From assembly GCA_002269645.1 (NCBI GenBank), contig NIVC01000434.1:62001-126000 (forward strand): a stretch of DNA of 64,000 nt, written 5' to 3'. The notes below the pieces were generated by a model, which worked only from the letters and a program-made list of their open reading frames with translations, had not been told where the DNA came from and ran no database searches. Shown piece by piece: positions 100 to 45,214 of this stretch. The first letter of the stretch is position 1. Each line of letters opens with the position of its first letter. Made by a program: the position numbers and the translations under genes. This DNA comes from Macrostomum lignano (Eukaryota).

Positions 100-450
100 A
101 CACCCTGGCGCAACGCCTACGGTGATATCGTCCTGCAACAAGTGGTGAGGCAATTCTACCCAGTCCGCTGATTCCTGAGCACATACTGTACGCAGGCACG
201 CACTCATACACACGCTCACACAGGGTGTACAGCAGCCCTTTGAGTTTCTGATTGTCAGGCATGTACAAGTCAGGGTGTGAATCGCAGGACAACTCCATTG
301 GTCAAATTTCGTGCACACAAGCCGTAAATAAATGTGGCCACACACGGGATCGAACCAGGTGTCTGTGAGCGAGCGTCGGACCAAGGACAACTGTATATAG
401 CTATATACAGTGGTCCTTGCGTCGGACGCGTTTACCGACTGCTGGTCCCC
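100..450 (-). mobile_element. tRNA-derived SINE-like element in the 3' flank of the ankyrin gene, interrupted by a 38-bp insertion
   Basis: With the insertion (382-419) and one TSD copy removed, the minus strand reads GGGGACCAGCAGTCGGTAAACGCGTCCGACG...GGTTCGATCCC. This gives an A-box-like segment and a B box (346-356). The body at ~209-267 is similar to 9151-9210 and 36674-36736. The 3' boundary is approximate. Confidence 0.5.
382..419. mobile_element. 38-bp palindromic DNA-transposon remnant (CAAGGAC termini) with 8-bp TSD
   Basis: CAAGGACAACTGTATATAG|CTATATACAGTGGTCCTTG is a 19+19 inverted repeat with one mismatch. It is flanked by identical CGTCGGAC at 374-381 and 420-427. Confidence 0.85.
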
Positions 451-479: not shown

Positions 480-2387
480 TCACCGATGAACTGGCGGCAG
501 GATGCTTCTTTTCATTGCTATAAATCTCTTGAACTCTTCAACGAAAACTTCAGAACCAGTTAGGCCTGACAAGTCGTTTAGGTCGCTTGAGTGCAACAAT
601 TGCGACTCAGACAGGAAGGCGAGAACCTCAATCTGGCCCCTGTAGCACGCAAAAGCGAAGCACTTCAACTCGTCGAGGAGCATCCTGTTCCAATGTTGAC
701 GCGTCCTACGGCGTGGATTTCTGCACGATCGAAGATAGTTCAGAACTCGAATGCACCCGTTTTGAGCAGCAAGCCACAGTGGTGACATGCCCACAGGGTC
801 CAGGACATCAACGTTAACTCCGGCATCCAGCAGTTTGATTGCGGCTTCTTCCTGACGCATGTCGATAGCTAACACAAGCCAGCTGGTACCGGATGCGCTG
901 ACGCGGTTCAGATCCGATCCGGCTTCAATCAGGGCGCCAATCACGCCAATATTTCCGGACCGCACCGCTATGCCTAGTGGAGTCAGATGGCCTTCGCCGA
1001 CTATGTTGAAATTCGCGCCGGCTTTGAGCAGCTGCAACGCTACCGCCAAGTGACCCTCGCGCGAGGCGATCCACAATGGGCTGCAACCGAAGCAATTGCA
1101 GTCGTCAGTTCGGGCTCCAGCCTTCAGAAGCAACTCGACTACGCGAGTGTGACCACCCTCGGAGGCGAAATAGAGTGCCGAGCAGCCCTCGAACCCAGAC
1201 TGATTCACATTCGCTCCAGACTTTAGCAGCTCACGAACACACTCAGCGTGACCTTCGAGTGAAGCGGATGTCAGTGGACTGTTGCCAATCGTGCTGAGCA
1301 CTTCCACTTTAGCTCTGTACTTCAGCAGCAGACGCGTGACCTTCAGATGTCCATTAGACACTGCAGCGTGTAATGGCGAACTGCCCATGTTATCGCAGCG
1401 ATCAACAGTGGCACCAGCCCTGAGTAGACGCAACACGGTGCTGACGTGTCCGTGATCTGCCGCCGTCCATAGAGGGGAAGCATCGGTGCAGTCTGCAAGT
1501 TCAATGTCCGCCCCAGCTCGAATGAGCTCGTCAACGACCTTGACGTGACCATTCTGGGCGGCGATCCACAGTGACGTGCTGCCGTCATTCATTGGAAGAT
1601 TCAGCAGAGCGACGCTGCACATTTCCGTTGAAAGCAGAAGCCGGACAAAGGACGCGTAACCGTTCTGGGCCGCAATATACAGAGGCGTGTAGCCATCTTC
1701 AGCTTGCTGGCTGATGTCAGCGCCAGCATTGATTAGCAGCGTCGCCACCTTCACGTGACCGTACTGCGCGGCAATGTGCATCGGCGACCAGCCCCTGTTC
1801 TCCGGTAGGTCGCAGTCCGCACCAGCGGCCAGCAACGCGGCTACTGTTGCCGTTCGACGGTTCTGAACCGCCACGTAGAGCGGCGTGGCGCCGAACTCTT
1901 GGCGCGGATTCAGCAGAGCTCCGGCGGAGATCAGCCGCTTGACAACGCGGACGTGACCGCGCCAAGCGGCTGCGCACAGCGGCGTCCAGCCGTTGCGCTG
2001 TCGCTTGTTCAGTCGGGCACCAGTTCGAATCAGGCGGTCCACTTCTGATGGCGAGGTAAAATATGCTGCAGTCTATAAAAGCTATTCACATTCAGTCTCT
2101 GCACTTTGCATCTTTTGCACTAGAGGCTTTAGCACCAGGGGCTTTAGCACCAGGGGCTTTAGCACCAGGGGCTTTAGCACCAGGGGCTTTAGCACCAGGG
2201 GCTTTAGCACCAGGGGCTTTAGCACCAGGGGCGCCAGCAATGGACCTAACCAAAACTGCCCCACAAGCAAGTGTCTCCAGCAACAAGCCGACTCACCCTG
2301 CAGGTCGCCTCTGTCAGCTGCCAGCCACAGAGCTGACCGGCCATCCGGCAGAACTTTTCGATCCGAGCTTCGATTCGTCTCATGCAT
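480..2387 (-). CDS. Ankyrin-repeat protein, 2 exons: join(2387..2297, 2044..480), 551 aa, ~14 ankyrin repeats
   Basis: The 520-aa ORF has 13 clear TPLxxAAxxGHxxVVxxLLxAGA-type repeats. An upstream ATG exon (2387-2297) ends at CAGG|GTGAGT in phase 1 and joins the acceptor CATCAG|AA at 2044. The join restores a canonical repeat, DGRSALWLAADRGDLQ-E-VDRLIRTGARLN. Confidence 0.9.
2123..2232. repeat. 15-bp tandem repeat (GGCTTTAGCACCAGG, ~7 copies) inside the ankyrin gene intron
   Basis: Directly visible; lies within intron 2045-2296. Confidence 0.95.
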
Positions 2388-2819: not shown

Positions 2820-3560
2820 TGAGATTCAGACAGACTGAGATTAGACAGAATAAGGATAGAAAAGATGAGATTAGACAAGATATGATCAGACAGGATGATT
2901 TCAGACAGGATGACACTAGACAGGATGGGAATAGTAAGGATGAGAATAGACAGGATGAGACTAGACAGAATGAGAATAGACAGGATGAGACTAGACAGAA
3001 TGAGAATAGACAGAATGAGACTAGACAGGATGAGACTAGACAGAATGAGAATAGACAGGATGAGACTAGACAGAATGAGAATAGACAGGATGAGACTAGA
3101 CAGAATGAGAATAGACAGGATGAGACTAGACAGAATGAGAATAGACAGGATGAGACTAGACAGGATGAGACTAGACAGAATGAGACTAGACAGAATGAGA
3201 CTAGACAGAATGAAATTAGACAGGATGAGACTAGACAGAATGAGAATAGACAGGATGAGACTAGACAGAATGAGACTAGACAGAATGAGAATAGACAGGA
3301 TGAGACTAGACAGAATGAGACTAGACAGAATGAAATTAGACAGGATGAGACTAGACAGGATGAGACTAGACAGGATGAGACTAGACAGAATGAGACTAGA
3401 CAGAATGAAATTAGACAGGATGAGACTAGACAGAATGAGAATAGACAGGATGAGACTAGACAGAATGAGACTAGACAGAATGAAATTAGACAGGTAGAGA
3501 TTAACAGGATGGGATATGATTAGGCAGGATGAGATTAGACAGAATGAGATTAGATGGCAG
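2820..3560. repeat. 15-bp minisatellite (GACAG[A/G]ATGAGA[C/A]TA)
   Basis: Directly visible; the core at 2940-3500 is highly regular. Confidence 0.95.
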
Positions 3561-4014
3561 TGAGTATTGTTTAGTTATGATGCGTTTAATTTAAAGGAAC
3601 TGGCACAAAAGTAAAATGATACAAGTTGCAGTACAACATAATCTATCTTCTATCGACATAATCCTGAATTCAATAATGCACACACTTGCAGTGCTTGCCA
3701 AAAATATTCAACAGATTCATACCTCGAAGGCCATAGAAACAAGAACGATATGAAACTGGAATTCACACTTATGGCATACTTTCAACAGAATAGTTCAGTC
3801 TAACAAAAAAGTTCAGAGTAAAACTTACTGCCAATGTCATTTTACATGCATGAAAAATTGGACTGCACTGGATTTAACTGGACTGCAGGCCTTGGGGGTG
3901 GCTTTCATTAAAAATTTATATTCTTCATCCCCTAGGCAGGGCAGGGGAATTGAGCTGAGAAGGCTATAGATAGAAATAGATAGATTTCTATCTATTAGGT
4001 TAGGTTAGATATAT

Positions 4015-4093
4015 TAGGTTAGATAGATAGACAAATAGATAGATGGTTAGATAGATAGATAAATAGATAGATGGTTAGATAGATAGATAGATG

Positions 4094-4140
<47 letters not shown>

Positions 4141-4143
4141 GGT

Positions 4144-4209
<66 letters not shown>

Positions 4210-4285: not shown

Positions 4286-6254
4286 GATTCTACTCTATCT
4301 AGATATTCACAGAAAGGTGAAACATCCGGTCGTTGAGATGCGCGGGGGCACTCCAAGGACAGCCAGTTGCGATCTCCAGCGCCTGGTAAAAAGCTGTAGG
4401 ATTGGGATGTGTTTTTCTGGGGGTGGCGGACGCCAGGCCCCCGGTGGGATAAGTGATCACGTGAGCTGCATTTCCGTTGTCACGTGGTCCAGGCGAGCGG
4501 TTAGCGCAGGAAAGGGGAAAGGGGCGGGCCGGAGGAGGAAGAGGAGGAGGAGGGGAGGAGGTGAGAATTGAGAAATCTGGTTTTTGGCCCGCATGGTGGG
4601 AGGGAGAGATTAAGAGAGGGAAGGAGGCCTGAAATTTGAAACGCCAGCCCCACCAACGCGATGCAAATATGTCCCGATGAGATCAGTGAGCTTGTACATG
4701 CACGAGTCGCTCCCATGGCAGTCAGAGAGGATTTCAAAGGTCTATATTCAGCTTATATGACTAGCTATAGCGCAGAAATGATAACCATCTATGGATAATT
4801 CGCACTCGACATTTTGTTAGAGAGAGGAGGCGTTCTGCTCTGGTGCAGTGGATTGTTCGGCATCATTGAAGATTGTACGAGTACAGAGTCTCTTCAGCAT
4901 TGATTTACTTTTGTCAGTGCAATAGCAAAGAATCCCCATTCGCTGCAACAGCAGCCACTAGAGAGATGACGCACGGCTTTTGAGTGCAGCTACGACCCAG
5001 ACACGAGTGCACAAAGCGCATGATATTTTTATACTGAACAGCAATGTGTCAAGGAAAACTTCAGGAAAATTGTCATTATTTCAGTCTATTTGAATTCGCG
5101 CGGCCATTATTTCAGGCTAGCGGGAGGGGTCAGCCTAACTGAAGGAAAAGGGTTGATTTGACCATAGACTATAACAAATATTAACCGTTTAAGATTGTTA
5201 TTGCTCTATCACTGTGTGCGTAAGATACAATGGAGGGTTGTCTGGAAGTGAGAATTCCCGAGTGGCTATCGCCGCTCGTGTCTATGGCCATTACCATGTT
5301 TTCTCACTTCCAGCTAACTTCATTGGTAAATTTATCCACCAGGATCCGAGTGAGGAGGAATGGGGGTGTGGGGGCTAAGCCCCCACTTACAACAACAGAC
5401 TATTTTATTTTACGCTCAGACTCGTTCTTTATTCTAAAATGATATCCCGGTAAATTGCTTTATTGTCAATTTTAAACAATGACCGGTCATTACTTGAATG
5501 TTATTGCCTTAACGTAAATTTCAATTGACAATTTAGAACTGATATCATTTTAGAAAGTGCTTTAACGTCTATGGTAAAAACCAAGTGGGTTGGTCACTTG
5601 TTGGCTATACCATTCGGCAATACCATAGCACTGTCATCCCGCCAATCTATTGACTCCTGAGAACGCGTCGAGCTAAATGGATTTTCGCCATAGACAAAAT
5701 CGATCAAGAAAAGTCCAATTTCTCTAGTTGAGCATACTGCATACAAAAATTAAGTTTAATCTGTCTTGGTTGTAAACAATTTTAGTCGAATAAAAAATCC
5801 CAATTGAAAATTGTCAATCACTATGATTGAAAGTGCAATAATTGATCTCAGATTATTGTCAGACCATGTCAACTTCCCTTATATTACGTGCCTGTCATAT
5901 ACAGCAGCTTTACTAAGGGGCTTATTAAGACTCAAGCCCTTCCATATAAGGATACGTGGGCAGGTAAACCACCCGCAGTCCCTATAGTAGACTCTCGGTC
6001 GGGGATTAACTCCAGCAACTTGACACGAATGTTTTGATTATCGTTAGCAGCAGCTTCTACAGGCGTAGCATTCGCATGGGGTCCGCTTACGAACAGTTTG
6101 TTGACATTTACGGAGGTAGGAGACAGACGGGACTGTCTTTTTAGCTGGAGATAAAATGCAGCTGCTTGTGCGCTGCCAGCACTATGGAAATGCGAACTGC
6201 AGCCATGCAGAAACAGCACTAGCGCCCCTGCCTCCCACTGACTCCCACAGTGGC

Positions 6255-6600
<346 letters not shown>

Positions 6601-6751
6601 ATTTATTTATCTAACTGTCGAGAAAATAATAAGAGTAAACACACTACATTTAAATTAGATGTTCAATTGAATAAGATAAGGAGCCAGTAAGTGGGCACAC
6701 GGCCCAAACCGATATATTTATGACATTAACTTTAGGGGTGCAAGATAAGAC

Positions 6752-6785
6752 CAAGGACGACTTAAGTAGACTTAAGTCGTCCTTG
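6752..6785. mobile_element. 34-bp palindromic DNA-transposon remnant (CAAGGAC termini) with 8-bp TSD
   Basis: CAAGGACGACTTAAGTA|GACTTAAGTCGTCCTTG is 17+17, with 16 bp perfectly complementary. It is flanked by identical GATAAGAC at 6744-6751 and 6786-6793. Confidence 0.88.
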
Positions 6786-6970
6786 GATAAGACAAGGGGG
6801 GTGGAGGCGCGACTGAGGAAAGAGGCGAGAACGGAGAGCCAATCAGAACGCAGCAAGGGAGAGAGAGATAAGAATAACAAGATTGAGCTAGACACAGAGA
6901 GAGAGAGAGAAAACAGAGTAAACAGAGACAAGTGAAGGTGAACTAAGAAATGACTAGGAAAGTCGCGACA

Positions 6971-9403: not shown

Positions 9404-9938
9404 CAAGGACAACTCAAGTAGAAGGACGGGACACTACGTTTCTTAGAAAAAGTTAAGGAGGCTGGTTTTCGCCGAAAAATACACTACGGATATAGGAACT
9501 TTCACTTTTTTTCATATTAAAATTGCTATTGCTTTCGATAGGAGGCAGAACCAGTGTTCATCTTATTTATTATATGCATAGCTAGTATCTAAGATATAGC
9601 TACATAATTAAATATTTATTTTATATGAAAAGTATAAAACTAAAATGAACAAGCAGTGAATTGGGCACATAATTATAGCCAACTGTTTTTTTAATGATAT
9701 ATTGCTAATAAATAGATGCATTCGATTAAAAAGATATTGTAAAATTCAAGTTAGTCACTAGTTAGCTTTAAACTATAATTGCTGCATGATATAGCTAGTA
9801 ACTAAAATATTTAGTAACTAAAATCCTTTTTAAAGTGAAAAGTTCCTATCTCGCTAGTGCATTTTTTCGTGAAAATCAGCCTTTAATAAATTTTCCAAGA
9901 AACGAAATGTCCCGTCCTTCTTCTTCTAGTGGACCTTG
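9404..9938. mobile_element. MITE, ~535 bp, with ~105-bp imperfect TIRs and CAAGG termini
   Basis: 9404-9508 is an imperfect reverse complement of 9832-9938 (e.g. GAAGGACGGGACA...ATAGGAACTTT vs AAGTTCCTAT...TGTCCCGTCCTTC). The termini are CAAGGACAACT...AGTGGACCTTG. The 8-bp flanks match at only 5/8 (TCTAGAAT / GCAACAAT). The interior is AT-rich and non-coding. Confidence 0.75.
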
Positions 9939-10795: not shown

Positions 10796-13700
10796 CTGCA
10801 ATGGGCACAAGAAAATTGGGGTGGAGTGAAGTATAATTGGGGTGGAGTGAAGAATAATTGGGGTGGAGTGAAGGATAATTGGGGTGGAGTGAAGGATAAT
10901 TGGGGTGGAGTGAAGAATAATTGGGGTGGAGTGAAGGATAATTGGGGTGGAGTGAAGGATAATTGGGGTGGAGTGACGGATAATTGGGGTGGAGTGAAGG
11001 ATAATTGGGGTGGAGTGAAGGATAATTGGGGTGGAGTGACGGATAATTGGGGTGGAGTGACGGATAATTGGGGTGGAGTGAAGGATAATTGGGGTGGAGT
11101 GACGGATAATTGGGGTGGAGTGAAGGATAATTGGGGTGGAGTGAAGGATAATTGGGGTGGAGTGACGGATAATTGGGGTGAAGTGAAGGATAATTGGGGT
11201 GGAGTGAAGGATAATTGAAGTGGAGTGACGGGCGATTTGGGGTGGAGTGACGGGAGCATGTAATTGATGGATAGAATGCAGGTAGAAGGGCGGATAGAAT
11301 ACAAGTAGAAGGTCGGATAGAATACAGGTAGAAGGGCGGATAGAATACAGGTAGAAGGGCGGATAGAATACAAGTAGAAAGGCGGATAGAATACAAGTAG
11401 AAGGGCGGATAGAATACAGGTAGAGGGCGGATAGAATACAGGTAGAAGGGCGGATAGAATACAAGTAGAAGGGTGGATAGAATACAAGTAGAAAGGCGGA
11501 TAGAATACAAGTAGAAGGGCGGATAGAATACAGGTAGAGGGCGGATAGAATACAAGTAGAGGGGCGGATAGAATACAGGTAGAGGGGCGAATAGGCTACA
11601 GGTAGAGGGGCGGATAGAATACAGGTAGAGGGCGGATAGAATACAAGTAGAGGGGTGGATAGAATACAAGTAGAAAGGCGGATAGAATACAAGTAGAAGG
11701 GCGGATAGAATACAGGTAGAGGGCGGATAGAATACAGGTAGAAGGGCGGATAGAATACAAGTAGAAGGGTGGATAGAATACAAGTAGAAAGGCGGATAGA
11801 ATACAAGTAGAAGGGCGGATAGAATACAGGTAGAGGGCGGATAGAATACAAGTAGAGGGGCGGATAGAATACAGGTAGAGGGGCGAATAGGCTACAGGTA
11901 GAGGGGCGGATAGAATACAGGTAGAGGGCGGATAGAATACAAGTAGAGGGGTGGATAGAATACAGGTAGAAGGGCGGATAGAATACAAGTAGAAGGGTGG
12001 ATAGAATACAAGTAGAAAGGCGGATAGAATACAAGTAGAAGGGCGGATAGAATACAGGTAGAGGGCGGATAGAATACAAGTAGAGGGGCGGATAGAATAC
12101 AGGTAGAGGGGCGAATAGGCTACAGGTAGAGGGGCGGATAGAATACAGGTAGAGGGCGGATAGAATACAAGTAGAGGGGTGGATAGAATACAGGTAGAAG
12201 GGCGGATAAAATACAGGTAGAGGGCGGATAGAATGCAGGTAGAGGGCGGATAGAATGCAGGTAGAGGGTGGATAGAATGCAGGTAGAGGGCGGATAGAAT
12301 ACAGGTAGAAGGGCGGATAGAATGCAGGTAGATGGTGGATAGAATACATTACATTACTCATAGGACTAGGTGGAACTGTGCACAGCGGGTACGGCAGCAC
12401 TCAACACAATTATATTCAGGCTGCGATAAAACATATAAAACCTAGCAGATTGAAGCCGGAAATACAAAGGTAGGGGTGCAGCCTACCGACGCCACCCTGA
12501 ACCGCCCTACCGAGATAAGACACCGCGTGACCAGTTATTTGTACAAGCATTACTATTATTAATACACAAGTACTAACCAGTCTATAACACAGGTCAGTTA
12601 AGGGCTAAGCGGAAGTGGCACGCTAGATAACAGAAATTTTATTTGAATAAAACATCTCCCCCTGTGTCCAGAATTATAGAACTCAAAAAGACTGAAAGAC
12701 GGGGAGAGGGAGACTGTAAGAGTAGGAGGATTAAGAAAGCTGGTGCCCCCCGTTAGGCCCGACCTTGCGAGAGAGAAAGAGAGAAAGGAGAAAGACAAGA
12801 ACGTCATTCCCAAATCCGAGGAGTAGTTTCTGACTGGTCTGGACAAGGTTCCCACCCCCAAGTCGATTCAAAGGCCGAAAAAGGATAGGATCATTTGCAT
12901 CTCTTATGCAGGAGTTGGGGTTGACGCTGTTGTGCACTGCCAGGGGGGCAAGAGAGGGAGAGAGAGAGAGTTAACGCTGCGTGTACACTCGCCGTAAACG
13001 TACAATAGGCCCGCTACGTCAGTGAAAGATTTTTATTGATCTATCTCTCTCCTTCTCTTTCTTACTGCACTTCCCTGCACTACTGACAAGCCAGCACTGC
13101 CCCGCCGACTGTTCAGATTAGAACCTACACAACCCACCATTTGCTCTCTCCCCCTCTCTCTCTGCCCTCTCCCCTGTCTGCAGCTCGCTTTTCTATTCGC
13201 TTAGCGGCAGCGACAGCAGCAGTCTCTACTGTCGCACTCGTGGGCGCCTGCGTTCTTCTCTCCGTTTCCTTCTATCCTTTTTTTTCTCTCCTGTCGTCTC
13301 TTTTATCGGCTTGATGTACCATTTGCCTCCTTCCCCCCTCCTCTCCTCTCCCCCCTCTCTCTACACTTTTCTGAAAGCGACGGCCGAACACTGACTATGT
13401 AGTATACCAAAGGGCGTGTGCACATGGACGAGTTAATTTGCATATATATATACGCATCTTTTCCACCGATTCGTCTCACAATCTATCGGTAAAATACTTT
13501 CTATAGAAAATCTCTACACACATAGAGATAGAACAGCCTTGAACCAATTAGTTCTAGACGCAAACTGCGTCCAGCTTCGGTTGCTAAGGGATACATCAGT
13601 CAGAACTAGTGCGGTGCAGAATGTCGCAAACAGGCTGCTTAGTTCGATCTAAACGAGCTTCAACTAAGAGCAATAATTCCACGGCATCGACTGTCAGCAG

Positions 13701-16700
13701 CGGTACAGGCGCTGCCGGCGGCGCTGCCTGCCTGTTTGGCGCCTGTTTTGGCGCCGGCGCCGGGGCAGGTAGCGGCGCGGCAGGTCGAGCGAATCCAGTA
13801 AACGCCGACGCGATTGAGAAGCTAACAGAGAGACTGGCTTATCACATCCAGCTGGGCAATACTCGGTCGGTGGAGCGGATACTCCGCAAACTGCGAGCGG
13901 TGCCTCCATCCAAGGTGGTTGTCTCGGTCAAGAGGCGACACCTCAGCCCGAATTTCCTAGCCTGGACCAACAGAAGCCAGGATCCATTTCTACACTTTCA
14001 CCAAGAGTGCTCGCCAGTGGTCTGGGCAGTGGACAATCAGCAGTGGCAGATGCTGCCAATTCTAGCCAAATACGGTCACGATCCTAACAGGCCTTTGCAG
14101 TGCAAACGGTGGAACTTCTCGCCGGCGTCCAGCAATCGCTCAGCGATGGTGCCCTACAAGAAGTTCTGGACAAAGGGCCGCTACACCTACCAGTCAGCTT
14201 TGGACTACTACTTCGGATCGATCTACGAATTTCTGGGCGAGGAGATGCAAAGAATGAGCTCGTCGGCTGTAGGCTACTCGTCGCCGTCAACGTTTTATTA
14301 TTTCTTTCAGCAGTTGCCCCAGCTGCTACTGAGAGGCATCGACGTGCACAGAATCGATTCTATCATATTGTTCAATTCGCTAGGCTATTCGCTAAACTGG
14401 TACCTCACCAAGTACACCAACGAGAACAACACGGTGCCGGACATTCCCGAACAGAACGACTCGTGCGCCGAGATCTTCACAGTCAGAAGTTTAATCAAAG
14501 CCGGCTTTTCCGAGTTCGAATGCCTCGAGTTTCTGTCCTCGTCGCACAACTGGTTCGGCATCCTGATCTGTCTGCTGTGCCACCCCAGACTTGACCAGTA
14601 CGGGTCGAACATCCAGCTACCGCCAATCATCCAGGAGGCCGCCCTGCTACTTATCAACTTCTTATCGTTGAGCAGCTCGCATCCAACAAGCGAAGAGATC
14701 AGCGAGAGCCTGGAGAACCTCTCCCTCAGGAAGCTGTACGCTAAGCGCTACTCCCAGCGACGCCAAGAGTTCAAAGACAATCTGGAGACGTTGCAACGGG
14801 CCTGCTCGGATTTCAACAAGCGACCAATGTCGCTGAGACTGCAGGCGCGCAACGCCGTTCGACGTAACATCGGCGGCGTGGATTTTGGAGCAAAGCTGCG
14901 CAGACTGGCGCAGACCTTCCCGGCGGAGGTGGTCGCCTTCCTATCCTACGTGGACATGGACTCTCTGCACCTGCTGCACCCGCCTCGGGTGCTGCTCAAA
15001 CTGGCCAAACGAGAGAATCCATTCTCAACCGAGGACGCTGCGGAAGCTTCGAGCAGCGATGGCGAGTCTGCCGGCTCCACCAGTCATGAAGGCGAGGTCA
15101 GCGTTGTTTAGAACTATGTAATTTTCAGTACGGAATTCGTAACTCTTATACAAAAAGTTTGAGTCCTTGTGTCCAAGATTTCATTCTTCGCTTTCTGTGA
15201 ACCGATGCTTTTTCCCTCCTACTAGCTAAACAACAAATAGTAATCATAATTATAATATTTAACCGATATGATTTTTCTATTTGCTGCTGTCCAACTCTAT
15301 AAACTAACTGTGTCTTCGTGTGTCTGTTTAGTCCTTGTGCACTCTTCAGCTTTCCTTCTGTTTACCTGTATGTATAGAAATTCTGTGCAGTTTTACACAT
15401 CGTTACACAAGTAATTAACCTTCTTAAATATTATTATTGTAAATTTTATACCTGTTGCCAGTTAAATCTCTGCTAACCTTGCATGGTTACTAATAGATAG
15501 AAGTTCCAACACGGTTTTTAACGATAATAATAGTCATAAAAACAGTAACCATGCAGTCAAAAGCCAAATTTGCTATTTAAAAAACTAACTGTGGCAATTA
15601 ACTATTAGCTAAATAATTTGTGCAACTGCGAGCCCGATTGTTAAAACACTGTTAACTAATCAGTCCGTTTGTGTCATTCAAAATAATTCCAATCTTGTTT
15701 CAATTGATTACAATTTATAGCGATAATGACTCACTAATAAAAAAGTTCTGTAATTTTTTTGATTCAGTTCAGAGTCCCCTGTCAAAGTTTATATGGTCGC
15801 TTGGTGTAAATACGGCAACTGGAAAACATGTGCTTCATTTTTCAAAGCATACACTGCAAAAAATTACTATGAGCATATATAGTAAGCAATGCATAGTATT
15901 TGTTCAAGTTTATGTATACCAGCCTAGATGCATTCATATGCCTAAGATATTTAAACGGAAACTGAAAAATCCGACTTGACATCACCGCACTGGCTGTTTT
16001 ACTTTTAGGCAATTTTTTTACCTGAAAAATATACTCAAGTCAAAACAGAGGATTCTATATTAAGCAATGATAAACTCTGTTCAATTCATTGATTTGTAAT
16101 AATATTAAAAATAATTGATTACACCTGGCCCAATTGGACCAGAGGTGCAACCGACAGCTCAGCCGCAGCTATTGCGCGGCGCATCTGAAGGCTGCGTACG
16201 GCTGTTCAGTCCAAGGACTGGGAGGTCGCCACACAGCCTCAATCACCCCAGCTAATTCTGGTACCCATTTTACAGCAAAGTGAACTGAAGCAATACAGAG
16301 TTGTGTCTTGCTCAAGGGCATAAATTGTTCCGAGTGGGATCGGGAATCGAACCCCCGACCTTTAAGTCGTGAGTCCGACGCTCTAACCTCTAGGCTACAA
16401 CCTCCCATGGATTTGTCGAATGGACTCTGCTGAGAAGACAAGGTTGTTTAATTTGGCGCCATCTCAAGCATTGATTGTGGCGCCATCTCAAGCATTGATT
16501 GTGACGCCATCTCAAGCATTGATTGTGGCGCCATCTCAAGCATTGATTGTGGCGCCATCTCAAGCATTGATTGTGGCACCATCTCAAGCATTGATTGTGG
16601 CGCCATCTCAAGCATTGATTGTGGCGCCATCTCAAGCACACAAATCCAGTTTAATTATCATCAATCAGCCCGAAAATTTTCAAGAAGGATTTGAAAAAAT

Positions 16701-19700
16701 GGCAATAATTTAGTCAGGTGCATCAGAACATCAAAATGTCCATTTCTAGACATCCTTGACTATCTACCATGTCTGTCAGTCTTACATTTTTTCGAGGGTA
16801 CGAGTAATTATTCTCCTCCCACTTCTAATTTTCTCAATTAACTATGCTTCAGCTTTTACTGCTGAAGTTTTCTACCTTAATTTATTATAAAGCCAAGAGG
16901 CGAAGTAGCTGAAAAGCCTAATTTAGGCTAAAAAATCATCATAAAGTATATTTATAGCAATGATCTGGGTGCGCAATTACGAGTAGTGTAGCTGAGTTAA
17001 ATTTTCAGTTCCAATAGTTCCATCAGCTTAAAACTCAATCACCTCAAAACTCCATCAGCTCAAAACTACATCAGCTCAAAACTCCATCAGCTCAAAACTC
17101 CATCAGCTCAAAACTACATCTGCTAAAAACTACATCTGCTAAAAACTACATCTGCTAAAAACTACATCTGCTAAAAACTACACCTGCTCAAAACTACATC
17201 AGCTCTAAACTACATCAGCTCAAGACTCCATCAGCTCAAAACTACATCTGCTAAAAACTACATCTGCTAAAAACTACACCTGCTCAAAACTACATCAGCT
17301 CAAGACTCCATCAGCTCAAGACTCCATCAGTTCAAAACTACATCAGCTCAAGACTCCATCAGCTCAAGACTCCATCAGTTCAAAACTACATCTGCTCAAG
17401 ACTCCATCAGCTCAAGACTCCATCAGTTCAAAACTACATCTGCAAAAAGACTCCATCAGCTCAAGACTCCATCAGTTCAAAACTACATCAGCTCAAAACT
17501 CCATCAGCTCAAAACTCCATCAGCTCAAAACTACATCTGCTAAAAACTACATCTGCTAAAAACTACATCTGCTAAAAACTACACCTGCTCAAAACTACAT
17601 CAGCTCAAGACTCCATCAGCTCAAGACTCCATCAGTTCAAAACTACATCAGCTCAAGACTCCATCAGCTCAAGACTCCATCAGTTCAAAACTACATCTGC
17701 TCAAGACTCCATCAGCTCAAGACTCCATCAGTTCAAAACTACATCTGCTCAAGACTCCATCAGCTTAAGATTCCATTAGCTCAAAACTACATCTGCTCAA
17801 AACTACACCAGCTTAAGATTCCATTAGCTCAAAACTACATCTGCTTAAAACTACACCAGCTTAAGATTCCATTAGCTCAAAACTACATCTGCTCAAAACT
17901 ACACCAGCTTAAGATTCCATTAGCTCAAAACTACATCTGCTTAAAACTACACCAGCTTAAGATTCCATTAGATCAAAACTACATCTGCTTAAAACTACAC
18001 CAGCTTAAGAATCCATTAGCTCAAAACTACATCTGCTTAAAACTACACCAGCTTAAGATTCCATTAGCTCAAAACTACATCTGCTCAAAACTACACCAGC
18101 TTAAGATTCCATTAGCTCAAAACTACATCTGCTTAAAACTACACCAGCTTAAGATTCCATTAGCTCAAAACTACATCTGCTTAAAACTACACCAGCTTAA
18201 GATTCCATTAGCTCAAAACTACATCTGCTCAAAACTACACCAGCTTAAGATTCCATTAGCTCAAAACTACATCTGCTCAAAACTACACCAGCTTAAGATT
18301 CCATTAGCTCAAAACTACATCTGCTTAAAACTACACCAGCTTAAGATTCCATTAGCTCAAAACTACATCTGCTTAAAACTACACCAGCTTAAGATTCCAT
18401 TAGCTCAAAACTACATCTGCTTAAAACTACACCAGCTTAAGATTCCATTAGCTCAAAACTACATCTGCTTAAAACTACACCAGCTTAAGATTCCATTAGC
18501 TCAAAACTACATCTGCTCAAAACTACACCAGCTTAAGATTCCATTAGCTCAAAACTACATCTGCTTAAAACTACACCAGCTTAAGATTCCATTAGCTCAA
18601 AACTACATCTGCTTAAAACTACACCAGCTTAAGATTCCATTAGCTCAAAACTACATCTGCTTAAAACTACACCAGCTTAAGATTCCATTAGCTCAAAACT
18701 ACATCTGCTTAAAACTACACCAGCTTAAGATTCCATTAGCTCAAAACTACATCTGCTCAAAACTACACCAGCTTAAGATTCCATTAGCTCAAAACTACAT
18801 CTGCTTAAAACTACACCAGCTTAAGATTCCATTAGCTCAAAACTACATCTGCTTAAAACTACACCAGCTTAAGATTCCATTAGCTCAAAACTACATCTGC
18901 TTAAAACTACACCAGCTTAAGATTCCATTAGCTCAAAACTACATCTGCTCAAAACTACACCAGCTTAAGATTCCATTAGCTCAAAACTACATCTGCTTAA
19001 AACTACACCAGCTTAAGATTCCATTAGCTCAAAACTACATCTGCTTAAAACTACACCAGCTTAAGATTCCATTAGCTCAAAACTACATCTGCTCAAAACT
19101 ACACCAGCTTAACATTCCATTAGCTCAAAACTACATCTGCTTAAAACTACACCAGCTTAAGATTCCATTAGCTCAAAACTACATCTGCTTAAAACTACAC
19201 CAGCTTAAGATTCCATTAGCTCAAAACTACATCTGCTTAAAACTACACCAGCTTAAGATTCCATTAGCTCAAAACTACATCTGCTCAAAACTACACCAGC
19301 TTAAGATTCCATTAGCTCAAAACTACATCTGCTTAAAACTACACCAGCTTAAGATTCCATTAGCTCAAAACTACATCTGCTTAAAACTACACCAGCTTAA
19401 GATTCCATTAGCTCAAAACTACATCTGCTTAAAACTACACCAGCTTAAGATTCCATTAGCTCAAAACTACATCTGCTCAAAACTACACCAGCTTAAGATT
19501 CCATTAGCTCAAAACTACATCTGCTTAAAACTACACCAGCTTAAGATTCCATTAGCTCAAAACTACATCTTCTCAAAACTACACCGGCTTAAGATTCCAT
19601 TAGCTCAAAACTACATCAGCTTAAGATTGCATTAGCTCAAAACTTTATCATTTCAGAATTCCATCATCTTAAAACTTCACCAACTCAAAACTCAATCAAC

Positions 19701-28937: not shown

Positions 28938-31900
28938 CGACACACAGACTATAAAGCTTCATAAAAAGCAATTCAAGCCCTCCAATGTGCAGTTGATAGT
29001 CGGAATGGCCAATATATATTTGGAAAATATTAAGACGAGGGCCGGAATTCTCCTGAATAAAAATTCAAACTGAATTTATTATTTAAACTTAATGGGCAAT
29101 AGAAGTTATTGGCTTGAATTTTATGTTTGAGGACAGAAATTTTGATAAAATACTCAATTTGTTTTATAGGAGATAGAGCTTCTATGACCTCTAAATCTTG
29201 GTATACATTAAAAACAAACCACCATACCCACCTCCTCAATACTTACCCCAAAAAGCCACACCACAAAACCCACTCAACAAATCCCACACCACAGAACCCA
29301 TCCCACAAAGCTATAGAATGAAATTTATTCTCACCTTAATAGTTTTAATACCCAGCGCTTTTGCGGCCTTCAAGTTCTGGCCAATATCGTCCAAGAAGAC
29401 CACACTGCTGGCTGGCAAGCCAAGCCGCTCTAGCAAGATTTTGTAGATTCTCTCGTCCGGTTTTCGGCAGCCAACTTTGCAGGATTCAACAATCTGCGAA
29501 AAATCGAAGGCAGGATTACTGCTTAAATTACTGATTGGAAATCAAAACTTAGCAATGTCTGTTAATAAGTGAAAATATTAAATATTAAAATAACTCACTG
29601 ATAAAGACGTTAGAGGAAATTTGTAAGAAAGATAAGAGATACATGAGACAGAGAGAGAGCCGAGAGAAACATGCTGGAGGAATAAGACAGAGGGGTGAGA
29701 GAATCGTCTGCAAGGGGTAAAAAAGAAACGTGCAAGAGAGAAAAGAGAAACGTGCAAGAAGGATGAGAGAAACGTGCAAGAGAGAAAAGAGAAACGTGCA
29801 AGAAGGATGAGAGAAACGTGCAAGAAGGATGAGAGAAACGTGCAAGAGGGAAAAGAGAAACGTGCAAGAGGGAAAAGAGAACGCGTGAGAGGGAAAAGAG
29901 AAACGTGCAAGAGGGAAAAGAGAACGTGCAAGAGGGAAAAGAGAACGTGTGAGAGGGAAAAGAGAACGTGCAAGAGAGAAAAGAGAAACGTGCAAGAGGG
30001 AAAAGAGAACGTGTGAGAGGGAAAAGAGAAACGTGCAATAAGGAAAAGAGAACGTGTGAGAGGGAAAAGAGAACGTGTGAGAGGGAAAAGAGAACGTGTG
30101 AGAGGGAAAAGAGAACATGTGAGAGGGAAAAGAGAACATGTGAGAGGGAAAAGAGAAACGTGCAATAAGGAAAAGAGAACGTGCAAGAGGGAAAAGAGAA
30201 ACGTGCAAGAGGGAAAAGAGAAACGTGCAAGAGGGAAAAGAGAAACGTGCAAGAGGGAAAAGAGAAACGTGCAAAAAGGATGAGAGAAACGGAGGGAAAA
30301 GAGATACGTGCAAAAAGGATGAGAGAAACGTGCAAGAGGGAAAAGAGAACGTGTCAGAGGGAAAAGAGAAACGTGCAAGAAGGATGAGAGAAACGTGCAA
30401 GAGGGAAAAGAGAAACGTGCAAGAGGGAAAAGAGAAACGTGCAAGAGGGAAAAGAGAAACGTGCAAGAAGGATGAGAGAAACGTGCAAGAGGGAAAAGAG
30501 AAACGTGCAAGAGGGAAAAGAGAAACGTTCAAGAGGGAAAAGAGAAACGTGCAAGAGGGAAAAGAGAAACGTGCAAGAGGGAAAAGAGAAACGTGCAAGA
30601 GGGAAAAGAGAAACGTGCAAGAGGGAAAAGAGAAACGTGCAAAAAGGATGAGAGAAACGGAGGGAAAAGAGATACGTGCAAAAAGGATGAGAGAAACGTG
30701 CAAGAGGGAAAAGAGAAACGTGCAAGAGGGAAAAGAGAAACGTTCAAGAGGGAAAAGAGAAACGTGCAAGAGGGAAAAGAGAAACGTGCAAGAGGGAAAA
30801 GAGAAACGTGCAAGAGGGAAAAGAGAAACGTGCAAGAAGGATGAGAGAAACGTGCAAGAGGGAAAAGAGAAACGTGCAAGAGGGAAAAGAGAAACGTTCA
30901 AGAGGGAAAAGAGAAACGTGCAAGAGGGAAAAGAGAAACGTGCAAGAGGGAAAAGAGAAACGTGCAAGAGGGAAAAGAGAAACGTGCAAAAAGGATGAGA
31001 GAAACGGGGGGAAAAGAGATACGTGCAAAAAGGATGAGAGAAACGTGCAAGAGGGAAAAGAGAACGTGTCAGAGGGAAAAGAGAAACGTGCAAGAAGGAT
31101 GAGATAAACGTGCAAGAGGGGAGAAGGGAAACGTGCAAGAGGGAAAAGAGAAACGTGCAAGAGGGAAAAGAGAAACGTGCAAGAGGGAAAAGAGAAACGT
31201 GCAAGAGGGAAAAGAGAAACGTGCAAGAGGGAAAAGAGAAACGTGCAAGAATGATGAGAGAAAAGTGCTAAAGGGACTTTGAGACATGGTTGAAATACAG
31301 AAGCTGATTCAAATTTCCAACCAAAAGCGACGTACAACCATACTTGTGAATGAAGTGACAGAGCGATCGAGTGAATGTCAATAGTCCAATTCAAACAAAT
31401 GCGAATCGGATGCACTATTGGCTATTTGCCGGAATTTTCCAGGCACAAATAGAGTCGGGCTATGATTATACCAGCTATCTACGATAGCTTTCAAGAGAGA
31501 TAGAATGTTAAAAAATGGTACAGACAGACAGACTGGGAGCTGAACGAACACTGAGTGAGCGCGGGGGGATTACTGGGGAACGAAAACTGCACCATTTAAG
31601 TCCCGCGCTCATACAAGCCATTAAGCTGGGAGTTGCTATTCATATATGGGATTAGCTGGTCTTGCTCACTCGGTCAGTAATCGGAGGCTGCTTAGGTTGA
31701 AATTTTTTATCACTATCATTTATCTATCCGTAATGTATCTTTGACTATCAGTGTCTCTGCTTGCTGTGTGAGATCAAGGGCGATCTGGGTGTGTCTTTTT
31801 CTCACTCCGCCTGTCTTCTATCTCAGTGTTCTATCCATGAATGTGTCTATCCCTCTCTCCGCCTGTCTTCTATCTCACTGTTCTATCCCTGAATGTGTCT

Positions 31901-34900
31901 ATCCCTCTCTCCGCCTGTCTTCTATCTCACTGTTCTATCCCTGATTGTGTCTATCCCTCTCTCCGCCTGTCTTCTATCTCACTGTTCTATCCCTGAATGT
32001 GTCTATCCCTCTCTCCGCCTGTCTTCTATCTCACTGTTCTATCCCTGATTGTGTCTATCCCTCTCTCCGCCTGTCTTCTATCTCACTGTTCTATCCCTGA
32101 TTGTGTCTATCCCTCTCTCCGCCCGTCTTCTATCTCACTGTTCTATCCCTGATTGTGTCTATCCCTCTCACTCCCCGCCGGTCTTCTATCTCACTGTTCT
32201 ATCCCTGATTGTGTCCATCCCTCTCTCCGCCTGTCTTCTATCTCACTGTTCTATCCCTGATTGTGTCCATCCCTCTCTCCGCCTGTCTTCTATCTCACTG
32301 TTCTATCCGTGAATGTGTCTATCCCTCTCTCCGCCTGTCTTCTATCTCACTGTTCTATCCCTGATTGTGTCTATCCCTCTCACTCCCCGCCGGTCTTCTA
32401 TCTCACTGTTCTATCCCTGATTGTGTCTATCCCTCTCTCCGCCGGTCTTCTATCTCACTGTTCTATCCCTGATTGTGTCTATCCCTCTCACTCCCGCCGG
32501 TCTTCTATCTCACTGTTCTATCCGTGAATGTGGCTATCCCTCTCTCCGCCTGTCTTCTATCTCACTGTTCTATCCGTGAATGTGTCTATCCCTCTCTCCG
32601 CCTGTCTTCTATCTCACTGTTCTATCCCTGATTGTGTCTATCCCTCTCACTCCCCGCCGGTCTTCTATCTCACTGTTCTATCCCTGATTGTGTCTATCCC
32701 TCTCTCCGCCGGTCTTCTATCTCACTGTTCTATCCCTGATTGTGTCTATCCCTCTCACTCCCCGCCGGTCTTCTATCTCACTGTTCTATCCGTGAATGTG
32801 GCTATCCCTCTCTCCGCCTGTCTTCTATCTCACTGTTCTATCCGTGAATGTGTCTATCCCTCTCTCCGCCTGTCTTCTATCTCACTGTTCTATCCCTGAT
32901 TGTGTCCATCCCTCTCTCCGCCTGTCTTCTATCTCACTGTTCTATCCGTGAATGTGTCTATCCCTCTCTCCGCCTGTCTTCTATCTCACTGTTCTATCCG
33001 TGAATGTGTCTATCCCTCTCTCCGCCTGTCTTCTATCTCACTGTTCTATCCGTGAATGTGTCCATCCCTCTCTCCGCCTGTCTTCTATCTCACTGTTCTA
33101 TCCCTGATTGTGTCTATCCCTCTCTCCGCCCGTCTTCTATCTCACTGTTCTATCCCTGATTGTGTCTATCCCTCTCACTCCCCGCCGGTCTTCTATCTCA
33201 CTGTTCTATCCCTGATTGTGTCTATCCCTCTCTCCGCCTGTCTTCTATCTCACTGTTCTATCCGTGATTGTGTCTATCCCTCTCCCCGCCTGTCTTCTAT
33301 CTCACTGTTCTATCCCTGATTGTGTCCATCCCTCTCTCCGCCTGTCTTCTATCTCACTGTTCTATCCGTGATTGTGTCTATCCCTCTCCCCGCCTGTCTT
33401 CTATCTCACTGTTCTATCCCTGATTGTGTCTATCCCTCTCTCCGCCGGTCTTCTATCTCACTGTTCTATCCCTGATTGTGTCTATCCCTCTCACTCCCCG
33501 CCGGTCTTCTATCTCACTGTTCTATCCGTGAATGTGGCTATCCCTCTCTCCGCCTGTCTTCTATCTCACTGTTCTATCCGTGAATGTGTCTATCCCTCTC
33601 TCCGCCTGTCTTCTATCTCACTGTTCTATCCCTGATTGTGTCCATCCCTCTCTCCGCCTGTCTTCTATCTCACTGTTCTATCCGTGAATGTGTCTATCCC
33701 TCTCTCCGCCTGTCTTCTATCTCACTGTTCTATCCGTGAATGTGTCTATCCCTCTCTCCGCCTGTCTTCTATCTCACTGTTCTATCCGTGAATGTGTCCA
33801 TCCCTCTCTCCGCCTGTCTTCTATCTCACTGTTCTATCCCTGATTGTGTCTATCCCTCTCTCCGCCCGTCTTCTATCTCACTGTTCTATCCCTGATTGTG
33901 TCTATCCCTCTCACTCCCCGCCGGTCTTCTATCTCACTGTTCTATCCCTGATTGTGTCTATCCCTCTCTCCGCCTTTCTTCTATCTCACTGTTCTATCCG
34001 TGATTGTGTCTATCCCTCTCCCCGCCTGTCTTCTATCTCACTGTTCTATCCCTGATTGTGTCCATCCCTCTCTCCGCCTGTCTTCTATCTCACTGTTCTA
34101 TCCGTGATTGTGTCTATCCCTCTCCCCGCCTGTCTTCTATCTCACTGTTCTATCCCTGATTGTGTCCATCCCTCTCTCCGCCTGTCTTCTATCTCACTGT
34201 TCTATCCCTGATTTTCTTTACCATTCTGTACGTCAACAGTGGTGCCTATTTTTTCCTAACTAATTGTCGCCTTTATCTTTAGCAGCTCTGACACGCAAAA
34301 AACTACGCAATAGGCTCGGCCAATTCAACTTTATTTATAGCCTGCGCGTGCCAGCCGGCAGTTTAATTGGCGCAAAAGCCGAGCCAGACTATTTAGTACA
34401 ATTATATCCGCCTACCAAAATTGTTGCCCAAATTATTTTAATTACCCTGTTAGTCATGCTTTAGGAGACGGGGACAGCTGGTGATGACGGCCAGGCGGGT
34501 GCTTGTGATAAGAGGGCAAGGCGGGTGCTGGTGACAAGAGGGCAAGGCGGGTGCTGGTGATAAGAGGCCAAGGCGGGTGCTGGTGATAAGAGGGCAAGGT
34601 GGGTGCTAGTGATAAGAGGCCAAGGCGGGTGCTGGTGATAAGAGGGCAAGGTGGGTGCTAGTGATAAGAGGCCAAGGCGGGTGCTGGTGATAAGAGGGCA
34701 AGGTGGGTGCTAGTGATAAGAGGCCAAGGCGGGTGCTAGTGATAAGAGGCCAAGGCAGTGCTTGTGATAAGAGGGCAAGGTGGGTGCTAGTGATAAGAGG
34801 CCAAGGCGGGTGCTGGTGATAAGAGGGCAAGGTGGGTGCTAGTGATAAGAGGCCAAGGCGGGTGCTGGTGACAAGAGGCCAAGGCAGTGCTTGTGATAAG

Positions 34901-45013: not shown

Positions 45014-45214
45014 TGTGGCGAGTTGAGCCACGTAAAGTTTATTTGGAAGTAGCAGGGTGGAGGCGCGCGAGACAAAAGTCTAAAGTTATATAGGCCAGCG
45101 GTGTACACTGGGCAGCCAATCAACGCACAGCGACCGTGCACCTAGCGCCGGCCTCCCCGGCCGGGGTTGGGGTGGCTGCTGGAGCGCGTACGCGCGTGTG
45201 GCGTGACCGCCACA
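45014..45214 (-). repeat. 3' LTR of gypsy element
   Basis: TG...CA termini. On the minus strand a TATATAA box and AATAAA are present, and the LTR is preceded by the PPT CTGGGGGGAGCCA (45227-45215). Confidence 0.96.

What the first reader, a model, noticed from the sequence alone, without database searches (positions are those of the whole stretch)
6744..6793. Exactly 17+17-bp CAAGGAC palindrome with 8-bp TSD: second, independent footprint
Seen: GATAAGAC-[CAAGGACGACTTAAGTA|GACTTAAGTCGTCCTTG]-GATAAGAC. It shares the terminal consensus CAAGGACNACT with the 382-419 element but has a different internal sequence and a different target. Total length is 34 bp = 2x17, the overhang length established for P-element transposase cleavage. 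Inference: two footprints from different subfamilies within 6.4 kb suggest a frequently excising P-like family that leaves micro-hairpins across this genome. An alternative is a family of ultra-short mobilisable MITEs, far below the usual MITE size.
Basis: partly seen in the sequence, partly recalled or inferred. Interest (0 to 1): 0.8.

Follow-up and report, generated by a model that had tools for sequence, protein, structure and literature searches.

The report
Leftover stub of an excised transposon
The 34-bp palindrome is what remains of a 740-bp non-coding DNA transposon that is still intact at the same spot in a duplicate copy of this flatworm locus, so it is an ordinary transposon scar, though its shape hints at how the unknown transposase cuts.

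Summary
In detail: GATAAGAC | 34-bp palindrome | GATAAGAC sits at 6744-6793. A sister (CGTCGGAC | 38 bp | CGTCGGAC) sits at 374-427. No such structure appeared in 60 shuffles.

The window is Macrostomum lignano, contig NIVC01000434.1. The assembly holds three copies of this locus. In a second copy (L004), the same site with the same 8-bp duplication carries a 740-bp foldback element with 262-nt inverted repeats starting CAAGGACGACTTAAGTAGAAGGACGGG.

The palindrome therefore equals the element's first 18-19 nt plus its last 15-16 nt, joined with at most 1 nt of overlap. It is a remnant formed in place, not a self-mobile micro-MITE. It is also not a clean 17+17 join, which would read GTA|TAC; the sequence reads GTA|GAC.

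My best reading (about 0.5) is transposase cutting about 17-19 nt inside each end, followed by end joining. That fits P-type staggered cleavage, or use of the GAAGGAC repeat at nt 18-24 as an inner end. Hairpin-driven deletion and abortive gap repair remain possible.

The superfamily (P or hAT) could not be assigned because no transposase was found. Similar stubs with 7-8-bp duplications occur in other metazoan contigs. Interest is modest.

The parts
6744..6751 (.). Left copy of the 8-bp target-site duplication, GATAAGAC
   Evidence: The same 8-mer flanks the full 740-bp element in L004 at 3457-3464.
6752..6770 (.). Stub of the left terminal inverted repeat, CAAGGACGACTTAAGTAG(A). 18 nt are certain; nt 6770 (A) could come from either end.
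   Evidence: Identical to nt 1-19 of the L004 element.
6770..6785 (.). Stub of the right terminal inverted repeat, (A)CTTAAGTCGTCCTTG, 15-16 nt
   Evidence: Identical to the last 16 nt of the L004 element.
6786..6793 (.). Right copy of the 8-bp target-site duplication, GATAAGAC
   Evidence: L004 4205-4212.
374..427 (.). Sister remnant of a second subfamily: CGTCGGAC | CAAGGACAACTGTATATAG|CTATATACAGTGGTCCTTG | CGTCGGAC. It lies about 60 bp downstream of the stop of the ankyrin-repeat ORF at 480-2042(-).
   Evidence: Its parent element was not available.
9404..9938 (.). Older 535-bp non-coding element of the same family. Left end: CAAGGACAACTCAAGTAGAAGGACGGGAC. Right end (reverse complement): CAAGGTCCACTAGAAGAAGAAGGACGGGAC. 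The inverted repeats are about 100 bp and diverged. The flanks TCTAGAAT / GCAACAAT match at 5 of 8 positions.
   Evidence: 84% identity to the L004 element over 160 nt. Present in all three locus copies with different internal rearrangements.

Best explanation
Shown: the 34-bp palindrome is the remnant, formed in place, of a 740-bp foldback-type non-autonomous DNA transposon. That element has 262-nt terminal inverted repeats, a 218-nt loop, termini CAAGGAC..., and an 8-bp target-site duplication GATAAGAC. It inserted before the locus copies of Macrostomum lignano diverged. In the window's copy the inner 706 bp were lost. What remains is 18-19 nt of the left end and 15-16 nt of the right end, joined with 0-1 nt of overlap, with both duplication copies untouched.

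Inferred (about 0.5): the loss was a transposase-mediated excision in which the DNA was cut about 17-19 nt inside each end, and the two donor ends were then sealed by non-homologous end joining. There are two ways to cut there. One is a P-element-like long staggered cleavage, which leaves the outer repeat as 3' overhangs on the donor. The other is use of the sub-terminal GAAGGAC motif at nt 18-24, a near copy of the terminal CAAGGAC at nt 1-7, as an inner pseudo-end.

The stub itself is inert: it has no coding capacity and has lost the sub-terminal motifs. It can still form a 16-bp hairpin.
For: - **Same site, two states.** L004 (NIVC01003893.1) has aagataagac|CAAGGACGACTTAAGTAGAAGGACGGG...CCCGTCCTTCTACTTAAGTCGTCCTTG|gataagacaa at 3465-4204. 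The window has the 34-mer between the same flanks. The flanks are 96.7% and 98.7% identical.
- **Element architecture.** 262-nt arms, 95% complementary, -292 kcal/mol, z = -66.
- **Junction.** 19 nt match the left end and 16 nt match the right end.
- **An available repeat was not used.** The 8-nt self-complementary ACTTAAGT at nt 9-16 of both arms would give a 24-bp remnant by slippage. The junction instead has at most 1 nt of overlap, which is the signature of end joining of two ends made just inside nt 16-19.
- **Sub-terminal motifs.** NAAGGNN motifs lie at nt 1, 18 and 53 of both arms.
- **The sister stub** is 19+19, and both subfamilies break right after '...TAG'.
- **No intermediate sizes.** No TSD-flanked palindromes of intermediate size (up to 200 bp) occur in 130 kb of this genome.
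- **Stubs in other animals.** In metagenome contigs, 13 of 121 CAAGGACNACT...AGTNGTCCTTG hits, representing 9 separate loci, carry exact 7-8-bp duplications. Some lie next to CUB, syntaxin or amidase genes. One family has five independent loci of 39-45 bp with identical arms and different centres.
- **Published background.** P transposase makes a 17-nt staggered cut (PMC7776569). End-joining footprints consist of the overhang sequence between the duplications, and hAT elements put hairpins on the flanks (PMC3878927). P-superfamily Galileo has foldback-like long repeats and 7-bp duplications (PMC3573991).
Against: - No transposase of any cut-and-paste superfamily other than a mariner fragment was found, so neither the enzyme nor its cleavage geometry is known.
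- The left stub (18-19 nt) and the sister (19+19) exceed the 17 nt of Drosophila P.
- CAAGG and an 8-bp duplication fit hAT (YARNG rule, from memory), whose excision should leave no element sequence.
- A 262-bp near-perfect inverted repeat is unstable in itself. The neighbouring family member at 9404 differs among the three locus copies by large, clearly non-transposase rearrangements.
- There are only two stubs in this genome sample.
- The metagenome search was limited to 22-52 bp by design, so it cannot show an upper size limit.
- No empty site was recovered: L005 loses homology at window 6971.
Confidence: 0.5

Rival explanations
1. Transposase-independent deletion driven by the long inverted repeat. 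The 262-bp arms extrude as a hairpin or cruciform. Structure-specific nucleases or stalled replication remove the extruded part, and the short un-extruded outer arms are rejoined, which naturally gives a near-symmetric stub.
For: The stem is extremely stable. Symmetry follows directly from the geometry. The 9404 family member shows several structural rearrangements among the locus copies. Galileo '2-TIR' and deletion derivatives are common in nature (PMC3573991).
Against: Slippage should use the 8-nt direct repeat ACTTAAGT present in both arms and give a 24-bp remnant, but the junction has at most 1 nt of overlap. Nothing in the stem marks nt 16-19: the first arm mismatch is at nt 42. The two subfamilies here give 15-19 nt per side, while the metagenome stubs span 26-47 bp in total, a wider range that the 22-52-bp search window partly imposes. 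No stubs of 50-200 bp occur in 130 kb.
Confidence: 0.25
2. Abortive gap repair. The element excised completely, and repair synthesis from a sister or homeologous copy copied only the first 16-19 nt from each end before the nascent strands were released and joined.
For: This is a known route from full-length to internally deleted P and Ac/Ds elements (established knowledge; also discussed in PMC3878927 and PMC4423477). It keeps both duplication copies and uses little overlap at the joint.
Against: It predicts widely scattered and usually asymmetric breakpoints. Here two independent events stop within 15-19 nt on all four sides. Nascent strands from the two ends have the same sequence, not complementary ones, so early annealing is not favoured.
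Confidence: 0.13
3. The 34-mer is a self-mobilisable ultra-short MITE that inserted here on its own.
For: It has perfect duplications and intact outermost termini. Similar short units occur at many unrelated sites in other animals.
Against: The full 740-bp element occupies the same site with the same duplication in L004. No second copy of this 34-mer exists in 130 kb. In the multi-locus metagenome family, copies differ at their centres, as independent joints would. The stub lacks the sub-terminal motifs at nt 18 and 53.
Confidence: 0.03
4. Sequencing or assembly artefact: the polymerase or the assembler skipped the hairpin in this contig.
For: The Mlig_3_7 assembly is highly redundant and repeat-rich (PMC5730564), and long hairpins are error-prone templates.
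Against: Two such stubs from different subfamilies lie in one contig. The same kind of stub occurs in unrelated metagenome assemblies, sometimes at the same locus in independent samples (L047/L064, L060/L110, L071/L034). The junction is clean.
Confidence: 0.04

Closest known systems
Excision footprints of the Drosophila P element (17-nt staggered cleavage, repaired by end joining)
   Same: Both target-site duplication copies are kept (8 bp). Between them lie about 15-19 nt of each terminal repeat, joined with little or no overlap. The total length of 34 bp equals 2x17.
   Different: The left stub is 18-19 nt and the sister is 19+19, both longer than 17. There is no sequence similarity to P termini. 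No THAP9/P-type transposase was found. This is a natural, fixed allele in a flatworm rather than a laboratory excision.
Galileo (P superfamily) foldback-like elements and their '2-TIR' deletion derivatives in Drosophila (PMC3573991)
   Same: The parent is a non-coding element made almost entirely of long inverted repeats. Related stubs in other animals have 7-bp duplications, as Galileo does. Copies vary strongly in structure.
   Different: Galileo 2-TIR copies keep hundreds of bp of repeat. Here only about 17 nt per side survive. Relatedness of the transposases is untested.
hAT-superfamily MITEs
   Same: 8-bp duplication; terminus CAAGG fits the hAT YARNG rule (from memory); the elements are non-autonomous.
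   Different: hAT excision forms hairpins on the flanking DNA and leaves no element sequence (PMC3878927). The target pattern NTNNNNAN is only half met: A at position 7 in both sites, T at position 2 in neither. Relatives make 7-bp duplications.
'Nearly precise excision' of Tn10 in E. coli (from memory: a transposase-independent deletion that leaves a ~50-bp remnant between intact duplications)
   Same: A long inverted-repeat element collapses to a short palindromic remnant flanked by intact duplications.
   Different: That event occurs by slippage between 24-bp direct repeats. Here the available 8-nt repeat was not used and the junction overlap is at most 1 nt.

Membership tests
Non-autonomous terminal-inverted-repeat DNA transposon (foldback-type MITE), parent of the stub | Terminal inverted repeats | tested here: met
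   L004 3464-3725 / 3944-4205: 262 nt, 95% complementary.
Non-autonomous terminal-inverted-repeat DNA transposon (foldback-type MITE), parent of the stub | Target-site duplication of fixed length | tested here: met
   GATAAGAC on both sides in L004 and in the window. The sister has CGTCGGAC.
Non-autonomous terminal-inverted-repeat DNA transposon (foldback-type MITE), parent of the stub | No transposase gene; several related copies in the genome | tested here: met
   The element is 740 bp, almost all stem. Related copies lie at window 9404 (present in all 3 locus copies) and 382.
Excision or deletion remnant formed in place | Full element at the same site, with the same duplication, in an allelic or paralogous copy | tested here: met
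   L004 versus window.
Excision or deletion remnant formed in place | An empty site (single GATAAGAC) in a further copy or strain | not testable with these tools
   L005 loses homology at the (CTAT)n tract at window 6971. No other assembly was reachable.
P superfamily (P, Galileo, 1360; THAP9-type transposase) | Autonomous copy encoding a THAP + RNase-H-like + GTP-binding-insertion transposase with the same termini | tested here: inconclusive
   No such domain was found in ORFs of the window, L005 or L007. Only 130 kb of a 760-Mb genome were searched.
P superfamily (P, Galileo, 1360; THAP9-type transposase) | 7-8-bp target-site duplication | tested here: met
   8 bp here. Metazoan relatives with the same 10-nt termini have 7 bp at eight loci and 8 bp at one. 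The feature is not specific, because hAT also makes 8 bp.
P superfamily (P, Galileo, 1360; THAP9-type transposase) | Long staggered cleavage (17 nt in Drosophila P) that leaves repeat stubs at the donor site | tested here: inconclusive
   Stubs of 18-19 + 15-16 nt and 19+19 nt. This is the right scale but not 17, and it is only indirect evidence of cleavage.
P superfamily (P, Galileo, 1360; THAP9-type transposase) | Palindromic GC-rich target motif (ATRGTCCGGACWAT; PMC2577343) | tested here: inconclusive
   CGTCGGAC matches the core at 5 of 8 positions and GATAAGAC at 4 of 8; both end in GAC. By my hand tally of the TSDs listed, GAC abuts the element at 4 of 24 half-sites across all stubs. The sample is too small and the comparison was made after the fact.
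hAT superfamily | 8-bp duplication with the pattern NTNNNNAN | tested here: inconclusive
   The length is met. A at position 7 occurs in 2 of 2 sites and T at position 2 in 0 of 2. Across the 24 half-sites of all stubs, A at the position next but one to the element occurs in 8 (my hand tally of the TSDs listed).
hAT superfamily | Excision through hairpins on the flanking DNA, so footprints carry no element sequence | tested here: not met
   34 nt of terminal repeat remain. This counts against a direct hAT footprint but does not exclude a hAT MITE deleted by another route.
Self-mobile micro-MITE | Identical short copies at unrelated sites, with no longer parent at the same site | tested here: not met
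   The parent is present in L004. There is no second copy in 130 kb.

The most novel reading that the evidence does not exclude
A family of DNA transposons spread across lophotrochozoan animals, P-like or of an undescribed type, shares the termini CAAGGACNACT. Its transposase cuts roughly 17-25 nt inside the element ends. Every excision repaired by end joining then leaves a micro-palindrome flanked by the target duplication. These stubs, frequent near genes and in UTR-like sequence, would be a natural fossil record of cleavage geometry and excision rate. They would also be the first evidence of P-type long staggered cleavage outside insects and vertebrates.
Probability: 0.3. Interest if true: 0.6.

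Novelty: new member of a known kind. Interest (0 to 1): 0.38.

Why it matters
On its own this is a dead transposon scar in an intergenic stretch. Its value is as a natural before-and-after pair. The duplicated genome of M. lignano preserves the full element and its stub at the same site, so the donor joint can be read to the nucleotide.

If a census confirms a sharp stub length, the cleavage geometry of an uncharacterised transposase could be read from genome sequence alone. The redundant M. lignano assembly would then allow excision events to be counted.

The stubs are also stable 16-bp hairpins, often placed just downstream of coding regions. This applies to the sister at 382 and to several of the metagenome examples. 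They may therefore matter for transcript structure, and for assembly and alignment artefacts.

Tried and rejected
- **Homology search with the ankyrin ORF.** Only generic hits at 42% identity or less, and no self-hit. The search did not help.
- **Homology search with the gypsy pol.** It gave a single further M. lignano locus (L007), which holds no family copies.
- **Look-ups of two window ORFs.** Neither is on record.
- **Homeologs of the sister site.** The ankyrin ORF has no plausible start codon and is not annotated, so the homeologs of the sister at 382 could not be fetched.
- **Rfam and tRNA scans.** Nothing found.
- **Literature search for the terminal sequences.** It returned only primers.
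- **Viral-contig scan.** Three chance matches: two lie in what looks like coding sequence (not checked), and one is an 88-bp palindrome at a contig end.
- **52-bp palindrome in metagenomes.** A family on about 45 contigs has inverse-complementary flanks and no duplication, so it is a larger palindromic repeat and unrelated.
- **Third state in L005.** Homology to the window ends at 6971. The replaced region holds mariner and integrase fragments.
- **Nested insertion.** I considered that the 740-bp element is an inner element inserted into a pre-existing 34-bp palindrome. I rejected this because the sequences bordering the inner part are inverted, not direct, so there is no inner duplication.
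- **Slippage between the ACTTAAGT repeats.** Rejected because it predicts a 24-bp remnant.
- **de Bruijn-graph 'turn-around' artefact for the metagenome stubs.** I reasoned this is implausible at usual k-mer sizes. It was not computed.

Full report
**1. Observation**

The sequence reads as described: GATAAGAC (6744-6751), CAAGGACGACTTAAGTAGACTTAAGTCGTCCTTG (6752-6785), GATAAGAC (6786-6793). The repeat finder reports perfect 17-nt arms at 6751-6767 / 6770-6786, separated by 2 nt. From the CAAGG ends, that is 16 perfect pairs around a centre AG.

The sister element at 382-419 is 19+19 with one mismatch and is flanked by CGTCGGAC on both sides. Both start CAAGGACNACT. A generic scan for an exact 8-bp direct repeat flanking a 20-120-bp palindrome returns only these two in 64 kb, and none in 60 block-shuffled copies. 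Both fold as strong DNA hairpins.

**2. Where the window comes from**

- The window has no tRNA or Rfam hits.
- Tandem Repeats Finder returned 79 rows for it.
- It carries an ankyrin-repeat ORF, a Ty3/gypsy pol with a DUF7041 gag, and exons of APH/ACAD-type, CIA30 and LSM12-like genes.
- A 496-aa SOCS-box gene (window 13621-15111) has its best named relatives in flatworms. It is itself on record as P0121.
- P0121 is encoded on three contigs of GCA_002269645.1, the Mlig_3_7 assembly of Macrostomum lignano (PMC5730564, PMC10733133).
- From the coordinates of L006, the window is NIVC01000434.1:62001-126000.
- That assembly is known to hold 180 Mb of duplicated blocks at 95% identity or more, because of the karyotype of the sequenced line (PMC5730564, read). 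This is why one locus appears three times.

**3. The decisive comparison**

In L004 (NIVC01003893.1), the flanks of the finding are 96.7% identical upstream and 98.7% identical downstream. At the same position, between the same GATAAGAC copies, L004 carries a 740-bp element (3465-4204). Its arms are 262 nt and 95% complementary, around a 218-nt loop. It folds at -292 kcal/mol, z = -66.

Both arms begin CAAGGACGACTTAAGTAGAAGGACGGGAAACCTCGTTTCTT. The window's 34-mer equals nt 1-19 of the left end and the last 16 nt of the right end, with one shared A. The palindrome is therefore a remnant of this element formed in place. The inner 706 bp are gone and both duplication copies are intact.

The reverse direction (stub first, element later at the same site with the same duplication) would need a targeted replacement and is far less parsimonious. 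The third copy, L005, loses homology at the (CTAT)n tract at window 6971 and carries mariner and integrase fragments instead. No empty site was recovered.

**4. Relatives in the window**

A 535-bp element at 9404-9938 has the left end CAAGGACAACTCAAGTAGAAGGACGGGAC. That is 16 of 18 identical to the stub's arm, including the 'AG' that forms the stub's centre. Its inverted repeats are about 100 bp and diverged. It is present in all three locus copies but with different internal content, which shows that these foldback elements also rearrange in ways unrelated to transposition.

No DNA transposase other than a mariner fragment was found in ORFs of the window, L005 or L007.

**5. How the stub formed**

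- **The junction looks like end joining.** A clean 17+17 join would read ...AAGTA|TACTT.... The sequence reads ...AAGTA|GACTT..., which is 18-19 + 15-16 nt. The junction overlap is at most 1 nt, even though both arms carry the self-complementary 8-mer ACTTAAGT at nt 9-16. Because that 8-mer is its own reverse complement, it acts as a direct repeat, and slippage across the stem should use it to give a 24-bp remnant. The joint therefore looks like end joining of two ends created just inside nt 16-19.
- **The sister points the same way.** It keeps 19+19 nt. If a 1-nt indel is allowed between the subfamilies, both break right after '...TAG'.
- **There are sub-terminal motifs.** Both arms carry NAAGGNN motifs at nt 1, 18 and 53. 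GAAGGAC at nt 18-24 is a near copy of the terminal CAAGGAC.
- **Two transposase-dependent routes fit.** One is a P-type long staggered cut (17 nt in Drosophila; PMC7776569), with the overhangs retained by end joining (footprint = overhang sequence between the duplications; PMC3878927). The other is cleavage at the inner pseudo-end.
- **Other superfamilies do not fit as direct footprints.** hAT and MULE excision put hairpins on the flanks and leave no element sequence (PMC3878927; PMC5499845, abstract as listed). In rice, excisions of mariner, Harbinger, Mutator and CACTA elements were scored as both duplication copies left with deletions and/or filler DNA (PMC4423477).

I put about 0.5 on transposase-mediated cutting inside the ends, 0.25 on hairpin-driven deletion, about 0.13 on abortive gap repair, and a few percent each on a self-mobile micro-MITE and on an assembly artefact.

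**6. Beyond this genome**

- About 45 contigs belong to a larger 68-bp palindrome without duplications, which is unrelated.
- 13 hits, representing 9 separate loci, carry exact 7-bp duplications, or 8-bp in one case. By my estimate, chance would give about 0.005.
- Most host contigs have low ORF density. Some carry CUB, syntaxin/SNARE or amidase genes, with the stub a few hundred to about 1,300 bp beyond the end of the coding region.
- One family (CAAGGACTACTAGATTACTTA...) occurs at five independent loci as 39-, 40-, 43-, 43- and 45-bp units. These have identical arms and different centres, as independent joints would. Three of these loci recur in independent samples.
- Generic scans up to 200 bp find no TSD-flanked palindromes with other termini in these contigs or in 130 kb of M. 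lignano.

The search window (22-52 bp) limits what can be said about an upper size bound. The 7-8-bp duplications and the foldback architecture recall the P superfamily, for example Galileo (PMC3573991). That is a resemblance, not a test.

**7. Verdict**

'Exactly 17+17' and 'P-like' are not established. This is a new example of a known kind of object. It is of modest interest, with one testable twist: the stub length may report the cleavage geometry of an uncharacterised transposase.

Noticed in passing
window 9404-9938; L004 6528-6858; L005 6338-6984: The older family member at this site differs among the three locus copies. The window has a 160-nt left arm, an AT-rich insert of about 270 bp and a 105-nt right arm. 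L004 and L005 have a 272-nt left arm and a short, different right end. L005 also has an extra inverted arm fragment about 100 bp downstream.
   Followed up: partly
window 45086-49062 (-): An intact 1111-aa Ty3/gypsy pol ORF (RT, RNase H, integrase) and a DUF7041 gag-like ORF lie in a 67% GC island within a genome of about 45% GC. The closest named relative is a M. lignano protein at 81% identity (P0141).
   Followed up: partly
window, whole: The window is very rich in tandem repeats (79 TRF rows). Examples are a 48-bp unit x54 at 17021-19624, a 52-bp unit x46 at 31790-34213, and (CTAT)n at 6254-6613 immediately upstream of the finding. Many of the long 'ORFs' are artefacts of these repeats.
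   Followed up: no
L005 1-4512: In the third locus copy, the region homologous to the window upstream of 6971 is replaced by other sequence. It carries a mariner-type transposase fragment (3322-3891, -) and an integrase-core fragment (1224-2411, +). The break lies at a (CTAT)n microsatellite.
   Followed up: partly
L013, L018, L020, L024 and about 40 other metagenome loci: A 68-bp perfect palindrome, TTTATACC-CAAGGACAACTCCTGTCATGATCAAGCTTGATCATGACAGGAGTTGTCCTTG-GGTATAAA, recurs on about 45 contigs from a few sample series (Ga0105053-55, Ga0209390, Ga0209491, Ga0335398). It mostly lies within about 30-250 bp of a contig end, with a few copies far from any end, as if it breaks assemblies. It has no target duplication.
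   Followed up: no
L002 1-88 (IMGVR_UViG_3300049009_000705): An 88-bp perfect palindrome at the very start of a viral contig contains CAAGGACAACTTAAGTTGTCCTTG and TTAGGG-like motifs. It is probably a hairpin end or an assembly fold-back, and it matched the pattern by chance.
   Followed up: no
window 374-427 relative to ORF 480-2042 (-); L043 1751-1786; L083 2145-2176; L012 839-864: The stubs lie downstream of coding regions, in UTR-like positions: about 60 bp for the window's ankyrin ORF, and about 150, 630 and 1,300 bp for the CUB-domain, syntaxin and amidase ORFs.
   Followed up: no
L004 3465-3594 and 4075-4204: Both arms of the full element carry NAAGGNN motifs at nt 1 (CAAGGAC), 18 (GAAGGAC) and 53 (GAAGGCA). 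These are candidate transposase-binding repeats. The stub breakpoint coincides with the second motif.
   Followed up: partly
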